From: Rebecca billardiae RCC1528
Taxonomy: Eukaryota > Protista > Haptophyta
Length of the DNA stretch: 64,000 bases
Reading direction: 5' to 3'
Assembly: GCA_965240325.2 (NCBI GenBank)
Contig: OZ251227.1
Span: 124,001 to 188,000 of the forward strand
The notes beneath the pieces are model-generated. The model ran no database searches and had not been told where the DNA came from. It worked only from the letters and a program-made list of their open reading frames with translations. The position numbers and the translations under genes were made by a program. Below are positions 29,733-33,569 of this stretch, piece by piece; within the stretch, counting starts at the first letter, position 1; each line of letters opens with the position of its first letter.

Positions 29733-32700
29733 TCAGATGCAGGGAGCGCCGAAGACGACAAACGGCGCCCACTGGTGCAGGAGGTAGGCGCGCGAGCCGT
29801 CCTCTCGCTTCCTGTGCACGAGCTCGCGCATCGTGGCGCACAGCACGCCCGCCACGTCCACGCGCCCATCGCCCCCCGCCTCGGGCTGAGGATCCAAGCG
29901 CGCAGCCAGGCGTGGGTACAGCTCCTTCATCAGCTCACACGTCTGCACGTCGTCCACGGGCCACAGCGAGGCGAGCAGCGAGCCGCAGCCCGCGGAGAGG
30001 AAGGCGCGCGCAATGCCGATCAGGCCCTCCGAGCTCAGCGCGCCGCGGAATGTGTCGCACGCGCTCAGCAGCATGAGGCGCACGTGGCGCAGGTCGAGGT
30101 CCTCGAGGTCTGACATGCCCAGCGTCGCCTCCTCTGCGCTCGAGCCCACCACATGCAGGCCCGTCGGCGAGCCGTGCAGCGCGAGGTGAGCGAGGTGCGC
30201 GCGGCCGAGCTCTGCCAGCAGCGCGCGCTTTGTCACCTCCGCGCCCTGCAGCCTCGTCACGTGCAGCTTGTTCGCACTCGCCGCGCTCGACTTGAGCAGA
30301 TCCAGCTCGACTTGCAGTGCCTCGAGCTCGGCTGCGCAGAGGTCGCCCAACGCCTCGCCCACCACGTCGCCCACCGCGAGCTGCGCCGCGAGCTGCTTGC
30401 GCGCTCTGCGCTCGAGCTCGCGCACCCGCACGCGCGCGCCGCCGTCCACGGCCCGCGCCTCGACCCATACGCACCACCGCTCCTTCTCGCGCACGGCCTC
30501 CCGCGCCTGCGCCACGTGCTCGTCGCTCTGCAGCCGCCACGGCAGCGCGTACGTGCTGTACTCGTCGATGCCCGCGACCAGCGCGCACAGCGACCCCTTC
30601 GCCCCCGCGGGGGCGGCGCGGCTGGCGGCGCGCTGCTCTTCTAGCCTCAGCAGCACGCCGACTGACGGCGCCACGCTCACGTCAAAGCGCTCGACTAGGT
30701 GCGCGCCATCGGCGTCGAGCAGCGCGGCGAATGGCAGCGCGTGCAGCTCGCCGTCGGGCAGCAGGATGAGCCTGTCGCACCCGCTGAGCGCGCGCGCCAG
30801 CGGCTCCATAAGCAGCGCGTGGCACCGTCGCAGCTGCTCATGCGCTGCCGCCTCCGCATCGGCCAGCTCCGCACCGCCGCGCCGGCGCTTGCCCCGCGCC
30901 TCCTGCGCCCCGACCCGCACTGAGGCGCGGACAGGCTGGGCGGCTGCCACGCCTGCTGCGCTGCCGTTGATGCGGCCGCTGGCGTCAGAAGTGCACTTGC
31001 GGCACTGGCGGATGGCGCCGCGCGTCTCCTGCACGAGCGCGCGCACCGAGTGCTCGCCCAGCGAGAGCTCGTGGAAAAGCGGCGGCGCGCTCTCGTCTGG
31101 TCGGACTACCCACGTGTACACGAGGGCGCTTGCCTGCTGCGAGAAGAGCACAAGGCAGACGCGGTGGCGCAGCGCGTACGCACGCATCTGCTGCCAAGAG
31201 AGCGGTGGCGGCAGGGCGCGCGAGCCCTTTGAAGGGTCAGGAGTGGCGGAGCGGCGGGGGTCCTGCGCGCAGTGCTGCCGCGCCAGCAGGAGCGCGAGCG
31301 AGCGAGCGCGGCCGCGCTCGGCCGCCTCGAGTGCCTCTGCCTGATGCCCTGAAAGCACGAGCATCCGCTGCAGGCCTGTGGAGGCGACGACTGGCAGATC
31401 AGTGTCCCCAAACGACACGCGCGTCTGATCAGAGCTGAGCTCGACCCACAGCGTGTCGTACACGGCCAACGCGGCGGTGAAGTGCTCGGCTGCGCGCGGG
31501 TATTGCCTAAGGCTGTCGTACGCGCTGCCCAGGTTGCCCAGACCAGTGCCCTCTGCCCGTCTGTCGCCTATCTCGCGGCTGATGGCCAGCGCCTGCGTGT
31601 GGTGCTCGATGGCGCGGTCGTACTGCCCGAGGCTGCAGTAGGCGATGCCCAGGTTGCCCAGGTGAGAGCCCTCACCCTGACGGTCGCCGATCTCGCGGCT
31701 GATGGCCAGCGCCTGCCTGTGGTGCTCGATGGCGCGGTCGTACTGCCCGAGGCTGTCGTACGCGCTGCCCAGGTTGCCCAGACCAGTGCCCTCTGCTAGT
31801 CGGTCACCTATCTCGCGGCTGATGGCCAGCGCCTGCGTGTGGTGCTTGATGGCGCGGTCGTACTGCCCGAGGCTGTCGTACGCGCTGCCCAGGTTTCCCA
31901 GGTGAGAGCCCTCGCCCTGCCGGTCGCTGATCTCGCGGCTGATGGCCAGCGCCTGCCTGTGGTGCTCGATGGCGCGGTCGTACTGCCCGAGGCTGCTGTA
32001 CGCGCTGCCCAGGTTGCCCAGGCGGGCACCCTCGCCCCGCCGGTCGCCGATCTCGCGCCCAATGGCCAGCGCCTGCGTGTGGTGCTCGATGGCACGGTCG
32101 TACTGCCCGAGGCTGTCGTACGCGCTACCCAGGTTGCCCAGGCGGGCACCCTCGCCCCGCCGGTCGCCGGTCTCGCGCCCGATGGCCAGCGCCTGCCTGT
32201 GGTGCTCGATGGCACGGTCGTATTGCCCGAGGCTGTCGTACGCGCTGCCCAGGTTGCCCAGGTGAATGCCTTCGCCCAGTCGGTCGCCGATCTCGCGGCT
32301 GATAGCCAGCGCTTGTGTGAGGTGCTCGATGGCGCGGTCGTACTGCCCGATGATGCTGTACACGCTGCCCAGGTTGCCCAGACCAGTGCCCTCGCCCAGT
32401 CGGTCACCAATCTCGCGGCTGATGGCCAGCGCCTGTGCGTAGTGCTCGATGGCGCGGTCGTACTGCCCGAGGCGGCGGTACGCGCTGCCCAGGTTGCCCA
32501 GACCAGTGCCCTCTGCCCGCCTGTCGCCGATCTCGCTGCTGATGGCCAGCGCCTGCCTGTGGTGCTCGATGGCGCGGTCGTACTGCCCGAGGCTGCTGTA
32601 CGCGATGCCCAGGTTGCCCAGGCGAGTGCCCTCGCCCCGCCTGTCGCTGATCGCACGGCTGATGGCCAGCGCCTGCCTGTGGTGCTCGATGGCGCGGTCG

Positions 32701-33569
32701 TACTGCCCGAGGCTGTGGTACACGCTGCCCAGGATGCCCAGGCGAGTGCCCTCGCCCCGCCGGTCGCCAATCTCGCGGCTGGTGGCCAGCGACTGCGTGT
32801 GGTGCTCGATGGCGCGGTCGTACTGCCCGAGGCTGCGGTACGCGCTGCCCAGGTTGCCCAGATCAGTGCCCTCGCCCCGCCGGTCGCCGATCTCGCGGCT
32901 GATGGCCAGCGCCTGCGTGTGGTGCTCGATGGCGCGGTCGTACTGCCCAAGGCTGTGGTGCGCGCTGCCCAGGTTGCCCAGATCAGTGCCCTCGCCCCGC
33001 CGGTCGCCGATCTCGCGGCTGATGGCCAGCGCCTGCGTGTGGTGCTCGATGGCGCGGTCGTACTGCCCAAGGCTGTGGTGCGCGCAGCCCAGGTTGCGCA
33101 GATCAGTGCCCTCGCCCCGCCTGTCGCCGATCTCGCGGCTGATGGCCAGCGACTGCCTGTGGTGCTCGATGGCGCGGTCGTACTGCCCGAGGCTGCGGTA
33201 CGCGCTGCCCAGGTTGCCCAGATCAGTGCCCTCGCCCCGCCGGTCGCCGATCTCGCGGCTGATGGCCAGCGCCTGCGTGTGGTGCTCGATGGCGCGGTCG
33301 TACTGCCCGAGGCTGTGGTGCGCGCTGCCCAGGTTGCCCAGATCAGTGCCCTCGCCCCGCCGGTCGCCGATCTCGCGGCTGATGGCCAGCGCCTGCGTGT
33401 GGTGCTCGATGGCGCGATCGTACTGCCCAAGGCGGTGGTGCGCGCTGCCCAGGTTGCGCAGATCAGTGCCCTCGCCCCGCCGGTCGCCGATCTCGCGGCT
33501 GATGGCCAGCGCCTGCGTGTGGTGCTCGATGGCGCGGTCGTACTGCCCGAGGCTGAGGTGCTGGCTCAT
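29733..33569 (-). CDS. TPR-repeat CHAT (caspase HetF associated with TPRs) protease
   Basis: 18 TPR units, then ALEAAERGRARSL, LILLPDGELHALPFAAL, HLALHG (His at 30174-30176), LSACDT (Cys at 30057-30059), IARAFLSAG, SLWPVDD, WAPFVVFG; intronless; ATG at 33569. Confidence 0.95.
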   Translation of the reverse strand: MSQHLSLGQYDRAIEHHTQALAISREIGDRRGEGTDLRNLGSAHHRLGQYDRAIEHHTQALAISREIGDRRGEGTDLGNLGSAHHSLGQYDRAIEHHTQALAISREIGDRRGEGTDLGNLGSAYRSLGQYDRAIEHHRQSLAISREIGDRRGEGTDLRNLGCAHHSLGQYDRAIEHHTQALAISREIGDRRGEGTDLGNLGSAHHSLGQYDRAIEHHTQALAISREIGDRRGEGTDLGNLGSAYRSLGQYDRAIEHHTQSLATSREIGDRRGEGTRLGILGSVYHSLGQYDRAIEHHRQALAISRAISDRRGEGTRLGNLGIAYSSLGQYDRAIEHHRQALAISSEIGDRRAEGTGLGNLGSAYRRLGQYDRAIEHYAQALAISREIGDRLGEGTGLGNLGSVYSIIGQYDRAIEHLTQALAISREIGDRLGEGIHLGNLGSAYDSLGQYDRAIEHHRQALAIGRETGDRRGEGARLGNLGSAYDSLGQYDRAIEHHTQALAIGREIGDRRGEGARLGNLGSAYSSLGQYDRAIEHHRQALAISREISDRQGEGSHLGNLGSAYDSLGQYDRAIKHHTQALAISREIGDRLAEGTGLGNLGSAYDSLGQYDRAIEHHRQALAISREIGDRQGEGSHLGNLGIAYCSLGQYDRAIEHHTQALAISREIGDRRAEGTGLGNLGSAYDSLRQYPRAAEHFTAALAVYDTLWVELSSDQTRVSFGDTDLPVVASTGLQRMLVLSGHQAEALEAAERGRARSLALLLARQHCAQDPRRSATPDPSKGSRALPPPLSWQQMRAYALRHRVCLVLFSQQASALVYTWVVRPDESAPPLFHELSLGEHSVRALVQETRGAIRQCRKCTSDASGRINGSAAGVAAAQPVRASVRVGAQEARGKRRRGGAELADAEAAAHEQLRRCHALLMEPLARALSGCDRLILLPDGELHALPFAALLDADGAHLVERFDVSVAPSVGVLLRLEEQRAASRAAPAGAKGSLCALVAGIDEYSTYALPWRLQSDEHVAQAREAVREKERWCVWVEARAVDGGARVRVRELERRARKQLAAQLAVGDVVGEALGDLCAAELEALQVELDLLKSSAASANKLHVTRLQGAEVTKRALLAELGRAHLAHLALHGSPTGLHVVGSSAEEATLGMSDLEDLDLRHVRLMLLSACDTFRGALSSEGLIGIARAFLSAGCGSLLASLWPVDDVQTCELMKELYPRLAARLDPQPEAGGDGRVDVAGVLCATMRELVHRKREDGSRAYLLHQWAPFVVFGAPCI
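31481..33556. repeat. 120-bp tandem repeat x18 encoding 40-aa TPRs
   Basis: TACTGCCC (or a close variant) recurs every 120 nt from 31501 to 33541. Confidence 0.97.

What the first reader, a model, noticed from the sequence alone, without database searches (positions are those of the whole stretch)
29733..33569. Caspase-like receptor with highly conserved TPR repeats and a variable-residue code
The 18 120-bp units are nearly identical, but variation concentrates at a few helix positions: the pair after GEG/AEG (TD, TR, TG, IH, AR, SH), the pair after NLG (SA, CA, SV, IA) and the triplet before LGQY (HHR, HHS, YRS, YSS, YDS, YCS, YRR). Higher-order duplications are visible: units 1-3 resemble 4-6, 12 resembles 13, and 14-15 resemble 16-17. 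The ORF begins mid-repeat and the His/Cys dyad is intact. This parallels the shuffling repeats of fungal NLRs and suggests a recombination-diversified non-self sensor wired directly to a protease (inference).
Basis: partly seen in the sequence, partly recalled or inferred. Interest (0 to 1): 0.8.

Follow-up and report, generated by a model that had tools for sequence, protein, structure and literature searches.

The report
Repeat-shuffling TPR sensor on CHAT protease
This algal-type gene encodes 17 near-identical protein-binding (TPR) repeats, which differ mainly at ligand-facing positions, fused to an intact caspase-like CHAT protease; it is a real and probably working member of a known kind of protein, and its role as an immune sensor is plausible but untested.

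Summary
Window 29733-33569 (- strand) is one uninterrupted 1278-codon gene. It encodes 17 exact-period 40-aa TPR units plus a degenerate 18th capping unit (90% nt and 83% aa identity between units), then a separase/Csx29-like pseudo-protease and a CHAT protease with the His1132/Cys1171 dyad intact.

Non-synonymous changes pile up at canonical concave-face positions of TPR helix A: N/S is 24/3 there against 31.5/32.5 elsewhere (p=4e-4). Omega there is about 1.4-1.6 in this gene alone, which is borderline, and GC3 of 0.91 may depress dS. Pooled over the four homogeneous paralogues it is 1.9-2.8.

The genome holds about 10 paralogues with 8-36 units, and their arrays show no positional orthology. 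This copy shows no sign of decay.

It is not an NLR, because it has no NTPase. TPR-CHAT proteins are known from bacteria, corals and humans (TTC28), and this kind of repeat diversification is known from fungal NLRs. This scan has already followed up a paralogue on other DNA of this genome (s1-350574) and reached the same reading.

Expression and strain polymorphism could not be tested, because no sequencing run was listed. The flanking inverted repeats belong to a roughly 1000-copy element and lack a target-site duplication, so the cargo-transposon reading is not supported.

The parts
29733..33569 (-). Complete intronless coding sequence, 1278 codons plus stop, ATG at 33569
   Evidence: ORF list and upstream sequence. 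Pfam TPR_12 545 bits and CHAT 139.6 bits.
31512..33551 (-). 17 exact-period 40-aa (120-bp) LGN/Pins-type TPR units, aa 7-686
   Evidence: TRF period 120, 17.1 copies, 90% match, no indels. Unit table. Mean pairwise identity 89.6% nt and 83.4% aa. Ungapped 40-aa-period match to Pins/LGN TPRs, E 3e-56.
32832..33551 (-). Most recent higher-order duplication: units 1-3 (33192-33551) and units 4-6 (32832-33191)
   Evidence: 5, 1 and 1 nt differences between the corresponding units.
31512..32231 (-). Older duplications: units 12/13 (31992-32231) and the two-unit block 14-15 / 16-17 (31512-31991)
   Evidence: 7, 8 and 5 nt differences against an array mean of 12.5.
31392..31511 (-). Degenerate 18th unit, a C-terminal capping helix of the array (aa 687-726)
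   Evidence: Keeps the L-x-Q-Y...A..A.. pattern of helix B and then diverges. It is conserved in all paralogues and in the bacterial relative P0121.
30837..31391 (-). Linker helices and pseudo-protease (separase SPD / Csx29 NTD-like) domain, with a disordered loop at aa 858-891
   Evidence: AF2 model pLDDT 85.9. The structural alignments to Csx29 273-750 and human separase 1570-2118 begin at model residues 63-80. The low-pLDDT loop is absent from distant homologues.
29748..30836 (-). CHAT (clan CD, caspase-like) protease domain
   Evidence: Pfam PF12770 139.6 bits against a cut-off of 24. VIA Z 30.0 to Csx29 and 28.0 to separase.
30174..30176 (-). Catalytic His1132 codon (CAC)
   Evidence: Invariant column H526 of alignment A1, 51 sequences.
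30057..30059 (-). Catalytic Cys1171 codon (TGC)
   Evidence: Invariant column C565 of alignment A1.
30354..30539 (-). Family-specific 62-aa alpha/beta insertion inside the CHAT domain (aa 1011-1072)
   Evidence: Absent from more than 80% of 42 distant CHAT homologues but conserved in the paralogues. Modelled with strands and helices.

Best explanation
This is an intact, probably functional single-chain TPR-CHAT protease. It belongs to a family of about 10 genes expanded in this 72-Mb, roughly 70%-GC eukaryote.

Shown:
- 17 LGN/Pins-type 40-aa TPR units are followed by a separase/Csx29-like pseudo-protease plus an active-site-complete CHAT domain.
- The array grows and reshuffles by duplication of 1-3-unit blocks.
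- Amino-acid replacements concentrate on one face of helix A (TPR positions 38, 2, 3, 9, 12, 13). The packing face and the exposed helix-B positions, apart from the variable 25 (and the core position 24), stay almost invariant.

Inferred:
- The variable stripe lines the concave groove of the TPR superhelix and binds an extended peptide or protein ligand.
- Each unit contributes its own specificity.
- Ligand occupancy either gates the protease (as partner binding gates Csx29 and separase) or delivers the substrate to it.
- Unequal recombination between the 120-bp units, together with substitutions at groove positions, generates new specificities among paralogues and probably among alleles.

An immune or non-self-sensing role fits this evolutionary pattern but is not demonstrated.
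For: - Domain calls.
- Exact 40-aa period and unit table.
- Block duplications.
- Helix A spans TPR positions 37-13 in the AF2 model. Variability has a helical moment on helix A only (pooled p=0.017; helix B p=0.57).
- A-priori ligand-contact class 2, 5, 6, 9, 12, 13 taken from HOP co-crystals (PMC1261162): N/S 24/3 against 31.5/32.5 for the rest, Fisher p=4e-4. Omega is 1.4-1.6 for the class and 0.34-0.38 for the rest in this gene, and 1.9-2.8 for the class over the four pooled genes, p=5e-8 to 2e-12.
- Amino-acid identity (83%) is lower than nucleotide identity (90%) between units.
- Paralogues have 8-36 units, and there is no collinearity between this array and those of L016/L017, although the CHAT halves are 87% identical in nt.
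- The gene is not decaying. CHAT-half dN/dS is 0.62-0.64. N/S on this gene's branch is 50/32, against 38/20 on the sister stem (p=0.6). 152 of 155 family-invariant columns are kept, as in every other paralogue.
- Fold: Z 30.0 (rmsd 3.0, 391 aa) to Csx29 and Z 28.0 to human separase.
- His and Cys are invariant in 51 aligned sequences.
- No strong hydrophobic segment (max KD19 1.57).
Against: - No expression, 5'-end or strain data: no sequencing run was listed.
- In this gene alone, omega > 1 at the groove class is borderline (Poisson p 0.07-0.014) and the helical moment is not significant (p=0.16).
- GC3 is 0.91, so dS is probably depressed and omega inflated.
- Long ORFs arise easily at this GC content, so an open frame is weak evidence by itself.
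- The concave-face assignment rests on homology numbering and the modelled secondary structure, not on measured exposure.
- Two of the variable sites (helix-B positions 24/25) are not on the groove.
- No ligand, substrate or activation mechanism is known for any eukaryotic TPR-CHAT protein.
Confidence: 0.6

Rival explanations
1. Substrate- or partner-recruiting scaffold with a housekeeping role (TTC28/TPRBK-like or separase-like), not a sensor. The TPR groove docks fixed cellular partners, and the differences between units and paralogues reflect sub-functionalisation, not an arms race.
For: The nearest cluster by language-model features is 'TTC28-like' (score 0.99). The closest folds, separase and Csx29, use their helical/TPR parts to hold regulators and substrates. 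The whole post-TPR module is shared with ordinary bacterial TPR-CHAT proteins (26% identity over 89% of the query). No NTPase or death-fold domain is present.
Against: Housekeeping scaffolds do not normally keep 90%-identical repeats with recent block duplications, lose all positional orthology between 87%-identical paralogues, or show an excess of replacements at ligand-contact sites. The family has 8-36 units per gene and a fast-evolving protease half (dN/dS about 0.6).
Confidence: 0.22
2. Neutral by-product. The array is a young, recombination-prone repeat in a redundant and perhaps unexpressed duplicate. The variable sites are simply the least constrained surface positions, and omega > 1 is an artefact of suppressed synonymous change in a genome with GC3 of about 0.9.
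For: GC3 is 0.91. Omega in this gene alone is only 1.4-1.6. The paralogues' N-terminal cap is absent and the promoter region is a mosaic of dispersed repeats. No RNA evidence exists.
Against: Exposed helix-B positions (18, 19, 22, 26, 29, 33) are nearly invariant while synonymous sites have diverged (dS 0.19), so exposure alone does not explain the pattern. The same positions are hypervariable independently in L016, L017 and L020. The copy keeps 152 of 155 family-invariant residues, and its branch N/S equals that of its sisters.
Confidence: 0.12
3. The gene is cargo of a TIR (mariner-like) DNA transposon bounded by the inverted repeats at 28092-28121 and 34470-34502 (the reading of note s1-341143).
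For: A 30-33-nt inverted repeat does flank the gene, 6.35 kb apart.
Against: - The 30-mer occurs about 1030 times in the genome (495 forward and 535 reverse; 0 for the reversed control), three of them in this window.
- Other copies share only 30-60 nt with either end and never the interior.
- The bases outside the two ends differ (AATGA / ACTGC), so there is no target-site duplication and no TA.
- The right copy carries a 3-nt indel.
- None of the nine paralogues is flanked in this way.
- The interior holds other, unrelated dispersed repeats.
Confidence: 0.03

Closest known systems
Csx29 (TPR-CHAT) of type III-E CRISPR 'Craspase'
   Same: N-terminal TPRs, a pseudo-protease/NTD and a C-terminal CHAT domain with a His/Cys dyad. 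It is the best structural match: Z 30.0, rmsd 3.0 over 391 residues. In Csx29 the protease is switched on by a partner-induced conformational change (PMC9729208 and PMC10028731 abstracts).
   Different: Csx29 has a short, non-repetitive TPR part and works bound to Cas7-11 and crRNA. Here there is no CRISPR context (the host is a eukaryote), the array has 17 near-identical units, there is a 62-aa insert in the CHAT domain, and sequence identity is only about 15%.
Separase (clan CD, family C50)
   Same: The helical repeat region, pseudo-protease domain and active caspase-like domain come in the same order. Z 28.0 over 410 residues to human separase 1570-2118.
   Different: Separase is single-copy and essential, has non-homogenised helical repeats, and has securin and cohesin as known partners. 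This gene is one of about 10 fast-evolving paralogues.
Eukaryotic TPR-CHAT proteins: human TTC28/TPRBK and the expanded coral TPR-CHAT family
   Same: The architecture is the same (a long N-terminal TPR stretch and one C-terminal CHAT domain). Corals show lineage-specific expansion and very variable TPR length, with 276-304 genes in Acropora and TPR regions of 31-3,832 aa (PMC12314368). The nearest Atlas cluster is 'TTC28-like', mostly Cnidaria.
   Different: Orthology was not tested. The best sequence matches outside this genome are only 26-36% identical and look prokaryotic. I found no paper in the searched library that links CHAT domains with haptophytes or microalgae.
Fungal NLRs with highly internally conserved TPR/ANK/WD repeats (e.g. 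Podospora Pa_2_10340, HET-E/D)
   Same: [quoted passage not shown]
   Different: Those proteins are STAND NTPases (NACHT/NB-ARC) with N-terminal effectors and 42-aa TPRs. This one has no NTPase, has 40-aa LGN-type TPRs, and joins the repeats directly to the protease. Allelic repeat-number polymorphism is shown there and is untested here.
Ectocarpus NB-ARC-TPR / LRR-ROCO candidate receptors
   Same: An algal gene family whose repeat modules are shuffled and show diversifying selection (PMC3341825).
   Different: There each repeat is a separate exon shuffled at the exon level and the output is an NB-ARC or GTPase domain. Here the array is intronless and the output is a protease.
LGN/GPSM2 and Pins TPR domain
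   Same: The closest natural solved TPRs. They share the 40-aa period and the G-N-L-G...Y...L-G-x-Y signature, E 3e-56 to 3e-54 without gaps over about 200 aa. From established knowledge, their inner groove binds extended peptides of NuMA, Inscuteable and Frmpd.
   Different: LGN has 8 divergent repeats and GoLoco motifs, with no protease and no repeat homogenisation.

Membership tests
CHAT domain, clan CD caspase-like peptidases (Pfam PF12770) | Profile match above the curated threshold | tested here: met
   139.6 bits against a cut-off of 24, covering profile positions 3-288 of 289. Also found by the genome-wide family scan at this place.
CHAT domain, clan CD caspase-like peptidases (Pfam PF12770) | Catalytic His and Cys at the conserved positions | tested here: met
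   H1132 and C1171 fall in columns that are invariant across 51 aligned CHAT proteins.
CHAT domain, clan CD caspase-like peptidases (Pfam PF12770) | Caspase/separase-type alpha/beta fold preceded by a pseudo-protease domain | tested here: met
   AF2 model pLDDT 85.9, pTM 0.86. Z 30.0 to Csx29, 28.0 to separase, 21.4 to gingipain R.
CHAT domain, clan CD caspase-like peptidases (Pfam PF12770) | Proteolytic activity | not testable with these tools
   Needs expression and an assay.
TPR repeats, 40-residue LGN/Pins type | Helix-turn-helix units with the W4/L7/G8/Y11/A20/F24/A27 pattern, repeated in tandem | tested here: met
   TPR_12 545 bits. L4, L7, G8, Y/H11, A20, H/Y24 and A27 are present in every unit. 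Two helices per unit in the model. Ungapped match to Pins/LGN.
NLR / STAND receptors | Central NACHT or NB-ARC NTPase domain | tested here: not met
   No NTPase family in the Pfam scan. The region between the TPRs and the CHAT domain aligns structurally to the separase/Csx29 pseudo-protease.
Repeat arrays with high internal conservation under diversifying selection (as defined for fungal NLRs, PMC4986451) | Internal repeat identity of about 85% or more | tested here: met
   89.6% nt and 83.4% aa mean pairwise identity.
Repeat arrays with high internal conservation under diversifying selection (as defined for fungal NLRs, PMC4986451) | Repeat-number polymorphism between alleles or strains | not testable with these tools
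   No sequencing run was listed. Between paralogues the number ranges from 8 to 36.
Repeat arrays with high internal conservation under diversifying selection (as defined for fungal NLRs, PMC4986451) | Positive selection at concave-face positions | tested here: inconclusive
   In this gene omega is 1.4-1.6, with p 0.07-0.014 for omega > 1. In the four pooled paralogues it is 1.9-2.8, p below 1e-14. Both estimates are exposed to GC3 = 0.91 and to recombination between units.
Type III-E CRISPR Craspase (Csx29) | Genetic and physical association with Cas7-11/gRAMP | tested here: not met
   The gene lies in a eukaryotic chromosome-scale contig. Its neighbours are a patatin-like lipase and unrelated genes.
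TTC28/TPRBK-like eukaryotic TPR-CHAT | Orthology to metazoan TTC28 (the shared architecture is met) | not tested
   The only link is a feature-space neighbour (0.99). No alignment or tree with TTC28 was made.

The most novel reading that the evidence does not exclude
Haptophyte-type algae may carry an NTPase-free class of innate immune receptors. In this class, a recombination-diversified TPR groove would recognise viral or bacterial proteins directly and unleash a fused CHAT protease that executes caspase-like cell death. That would give a genetic handle on the long-observed 'caspase-like' activities of virus-infected phytoplankton.
Probability: 0.2. Interest if true: 0.8.

Novelty: new member of a known kind. 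Interest (0 to 1): 0.4.

Why it matters
If the family really senses non-self, recognition would be wired straight to a protease with no NLR-type switch in between. The recognition surface would also be re-tooled by unequal recombination, as in fungal NLRs. That would add a eukaryotic counterpart to bacterial CHAT-based defence (Craspase, SAVED-CHAT) and supply candidate genes for virus-induced cell death in marine algae.

As it stands, the gene is one further, smaller copy of a family that this scan has already described in the same genome. The architecture and the repeat behaviour are both known elsewhere.

Tried and rejected
1. Expression and strain variation. The look-up of sequencing runs on the unique CHAT half listed no run. 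Neither test could be made.

2. Cargo-transposon reading. Rejected: the end sequence has about 1030 copies, there is no target-site duplication, no other copy shares the interior, and no paralogue is flanked in the same way.

3. Missing upstream exon. tblastn with the paralogues' N-terminal caps against 3.4 kb upstream found nothing outside the array itself.

4. Pseudogene. Rejected on branch-specific N/S and on retention of invariant residues.

5. Exchange of units between loci. The best inter-gene unit pairs differ by only 4-8 nt, but the mean inter-gene distance (16.3 per 120 nt) equals the divergence of the CHAT halves (12.7%). The close pairs are therefore explained by consensus-like units, and there is no clear evidence of inter-locus conversion.

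6. Positional orthology of arrays. None was found: Spearman rho is -0.23 and -0.01, and no diagonal is better than the mean.

7. Local dS at the hypervariable codons. NG86 inflates 'synonymous' steps in multi-hit codons, so array-wide dS was used instead.

8. NLR membership. Rejected: there is no NTPase.

9. Close relatives elsewhere. Two word-index searches gave at best 36% identity over 29% of the query or 26% over 89%. The exhaustive representative search was not run, because the family assignment is not in doubt.

10. Opposite-strand and off-frame ORFs over the array (for example 31839-33650 on the + strand). These were taken as by-products of GC-rich periodic sequence.

11. Rfam scan. No RNA family was found in the window.

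12. Organism identity. An earlier follow-up calls it a haptophyte. I did not verify this.

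
Full report
THE SEQUENCE. Window 29733-33569 on the minus strand is one uninterrupted reading frame of 1278 codons, starting at the first ATG (33569). The window is G000:C10:124001-188000 of a 72-Mb, 41-contig assembly with 60-88% GC. That makes it a eukaryote. An earlier follow-up of this scan calls it a haptophyte, which I did not verify. Pfam finds TPR families along the first 700 residues (TPR_12, 545 bits) and a C-terminal CHAT domain (139.6 bits against a cut-off of 24).

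THE OBSERVATION. It is confirmed in nearly every detail.
- Tandem Repeats Finder reports one array at 31510-33559 with period 120, 17.1 copies, 90% matches and no indels.
- In protein terms there are 17 units of exactly 40 residues (aa 7-686), followed by an 18th unit that keeps only the second helix and serves as a cap.
- Units are on average 89.6% identical in DNA but only 83.4% identical in protein.
- The higher-order duplications are real. Units 1-3 against 4-6 differ by 5, 1 and 1 nucleotides. Units 12 against 13 differ by 7. Units 14-15 against 16-17 differ by 8 and 5. The array mean is 12.5.
- The reading frame does begin inside a unit, and no cap-like exon lies within 3.4 kb upstream. 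Four paralogues also start inside a repeat, so this is not a sign of truncation.
- His1132 and Cys1171 (codons 30174-30176 and 30057-30059) occupy columns that are invariant in an alignment of 51 CHAT proteins.

THE PROTEIN. I modelled residues 607-1278 using an alignment of the eight closest paralogues and 42 distant homologues. The model has mean pLDDT 85.9 and pTM 0.86.
- Structural matches: Csx29, the TPR-CHAT protease of type III-E CRISPR systems, with Z 30.0 and rmsd 3.0 over 391 residues; human separase with Z 28.0; and gingipains with Z about 21.
- These alignments start in the last TPRs and run through to the C-terminus. The 200 residues between the array and the Pfam CHAT match therefore correspond to the pseudo-protease domain that precedes the active domain in separase and Csx29.
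- No NTPase domain is present, so the protein is not an NLR.
- A 62-residue alpha/beta insertion (aa 1011-1072) and a disordered loop (aa 858-891) are specific to this family.
- The TPRs are of the 40-residue LGN/Pins type. They align without gaps to Pins and LGN over about 200 residues (E 3e-56 to 3e-54).
- There is no strong hydrophobic segment, so a cytosolic location is likely.

WHERE THE VARIATION SITS. I anchored the unit on the canonical TPR numbering (L4, L7, G8, Y11, A20, H/Y24, A27). The most variable sites are then positions 2, 3, 9, 12 and 13, with 38 and 25 next. The same sites are the most variable independently in paralogues L016, L017 and L020.
- In the model, the first helix of each unit runs from position 37 to position 13. 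So 38, 2, 5/6, 9 and 12/13 form one stripe along that helix.
- Variability has a significant helical moment on this helix in the pooled family (p=0.017) but not in this gene alone (p=0.16). It has none on the second helix.
- Magliery and Regan found positions 2, 5, 9, 12, 13, 33 and 34 to be the most variable across all TPRs and to lie on the concave face. Positions 2, 5, 6, 9, 12 and 13 are the ligand contacts in the HOP co-crystals (PMC1261162).
- I took that contact set as an a-priori class and counted substitutions by parsimony on trees of the units. In this gene the class has 24 non-synonymous and 3 synonymous events, against 31.5 and 32.5 in the other 34 codons (Fisher p=4e-4).
- Relative to the array-wide synonymous rate, omega is 1.4-1.6 for the class and 0.34-0.38 for the rest. 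Pooled over the four homogeneous paralogues, omega is 1.9-2.8 for the class, and position 12 alone reaches 3.5-4.2.
- The exposed positions of the second helix (18, 19, 22, 26, 29, 33) hardly change although synonymous sites have diverged (dS 0.19). Solvent exposure alone therefore does not explain the pattern.

CAVEATS ON THE SELECTION RESULT.
- Omega above 1 is borderline in this gene by itself (Poisson p 0.07-0.014).
- GC3 is 0.91. This probably depresses dS and inflates omega.
- Recombination between units violates the single-tree assumption.
- The concave-face assignment is by homology, not by measured exposure.
- 'Code' is too strong a word. What is shown is a hypervariable patch, not a rule that relates residues to ligands.

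THE FAMILY. The genome has about 14 CHAT loci, ten of which belong to this TPR-CHAT family. All are intronless open frames.
- Unit numbers: 36 (L016), 29 (L017), 26 (L020), 17 (this gene), about 12 or fewer (L023), 10 (L018) and about 8 (L019). Three more divergent members have few recognisable TPRs, and one of them (L024) has lost both catalytic residues.
- Only the four long arrays are homogeneous, at 83-90% nt identity. The short arrays are 67-71% identical.
- This gene's protease half is 87% identical in DNA (80% in protein) to those of L016 and L017. Even so, its units show no positional correspondence with theirs (rho -0.23 and -0.01, and no favoured diagonal). 16 of its 17 units have their nearest relative inside the same gene. 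This is what continuing gain and loss of units by unequal recombination predicts.
- The protease half evolves fast, with dN/dS 0.62-0.64. This copy is not decaying, however. Its own branch has N/S 50/32 against 38/20 for the sister stem (p=0.6), and it keeps 152 of 155 residues that are invariant in the other eight aligned paralogues, the same as each of them.

RELATIVES ELSEWHERE. Two word-index searches of 5.8 billion proteins found nothing closer than 36% identity over 29% of the query or 26% over 89%. The hits are TPR-CHAT proteins, those with a source name bacterial and the rest from unnamed metagenome contigs. The best full-length match, P0121, sits on a compact, prokaryote-like contig. 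It shares the whole post-TPR module, including the capping helix. By language-model features the nearest cluster is a 'TTC28-like' cnidarian family.

LITERATURE.
- TPR-CHAT proteins are massively expanded and very variable in TPR length in corals, and TTC28/TPRBK is named as the human counterpart (PMC12314368).
- Fungal NLRs carry highly conserved TPR, ANK and WD repeats with repeat-number polymorphism and positively selected concave-face sites (PMC4986451).
- Brown-alga NB-ARC-TPR genes shuffle TPR exons (PMC3341825).
- I found no paper in the searched library that links CHAT domains to haptophytes or microalgae. That says something only about that library.

HOW IT PROBABLY WORKS.
Shown: a long TPR solenoid whose variable residues lie on one helix face, joined to an active-site-complete separase/Csx29-type protease, with an array that is remodelled by block duplication.
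Inferred: the variable stripe lines the inner groove and binds an extended peptide or protein, as the LGN/Pins groove does (established knowledge of those complexes). Ligand binding then either relieves an inhibited state of the protease, as partner binding does in Craspase and separase, or presents a substrate to it.

I put about 0.6 on this ligand-directed protease with a diversifying recognition surface. Within that, an immune or non-self role has roughly one chance in three, about 0.2 overall. The main rival is a housekeeping scaffold-protease of the TTC28 or separase kind (0.22). A neutral, possibly unexpressed duplicate comes next (0.12).

CONTEXT AND THE SECOND NOTE ON THIS STRETCH. Another first-stage note (s1-341143) reads the gene as cargo of a mariner-type transposon. 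A 30-33-nt inverted repeat does flank the gene, at 28092-28121 and 34470-34502. Five things argue against the cargo reading:
- The 30-mer occurs about 1030 times in the genome and three times in this window.
- Other copies share only 30-60 nt with either end.
- The flanking bases differ, so there is no target-site duplication.
- The paralogues are not flanked in this way.
- The interior contains other dispersed repeats, including a 620-bp element at 33754-34377 directly upstream of the gene.
I therefore take the pair for two independent remnants of an abundant MITE-like element.

WHAT COULD NOT BE DONE. No public sequencing run was listed for the unique half of the gene. The tools return no model coordinates, so surface clustering was argued from helix geometry and homology only.

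VERDICT. This is a further, smaller member of a TPR-CHAT family that the scan has already followed up on other DNA of the same genome (s1-350574, the 36-unit paralogue), with the same conclusion. Both the architecture and the style of repeat diversification are known elsewhere. I class it as a new member of a known kind, with interest 0.4.

Noticed in passing
window 28092-28121 (+), 34470-34502 (-), 58801-58830 (-): Copies of a 30-nt terminal sequence that occurs about 1030 times in the genome (495 forward, 535 reverse; the reversed control gives 0). This is an abundant MITE-like TIR family. Most copies share only 30-60 nt.
   Followed up: partly
window 33754-34377: A dispersed repeat of about 620 bp (20 or more copies at 79-85% identity), 185 bp upstream of the TPR-CHAT start codon. 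It contains tandem and palindromic CACGTGATCACGTG motifs (TRF array at 33804-33836). It is not found next to the paralogues.
   Followed up: partly
window 25813-28032 (-): The next gene downstream on the same strand is a patatin-like phospholipase (PF01734, E 4e-16) with a long hydrophobic, apparently multi-pass N-terminal half. Patatin domains are frequent immune effectors elsewhere. The adjacency may be coincidence.
   Followed up: no
window 28357-28700: A low-copy repeat with a 96%-identical copy at G000:C10:3415970-3416312 and four copies at 69-76% identity. It overlaps an ORF (28365-29063, +) that has no Pfam match.
   Followed up: no
L024 (G000:C8:1772000-1779000), CDS 868-4275 (-): A divergent TPR-CHAT paralogue in which both the catalytic His and the catalytic Cys are replaced. 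This is a likely pseudo-protease.
   Followed up: no
G000:C14:285756-288770 (+): A 1253-aa open frame with the same 40-aa TPR type (51-65% identity) but not among the CHAT loci. The repeat module may be attached to another output domain.
   Followed up: no
window 1-4000 and 50001-58000: Blocks of extreme GC content (0.81-0.88 over 2 kb), against 0.56-0.70 in neighbouring stretches. A 94-nt tRNA-Ser(GCT) call lies at 50840-50933 inside one of them.
   Followed up: no
window 30354-30539 (-), aa 1011-1072: A 62-residue alpha/beta insertion within the CHAT domain. It is conserved in all close paralogues and absent from more than 80% of distant CHAT proteins. Its function is unknown.
   Followed up: partly
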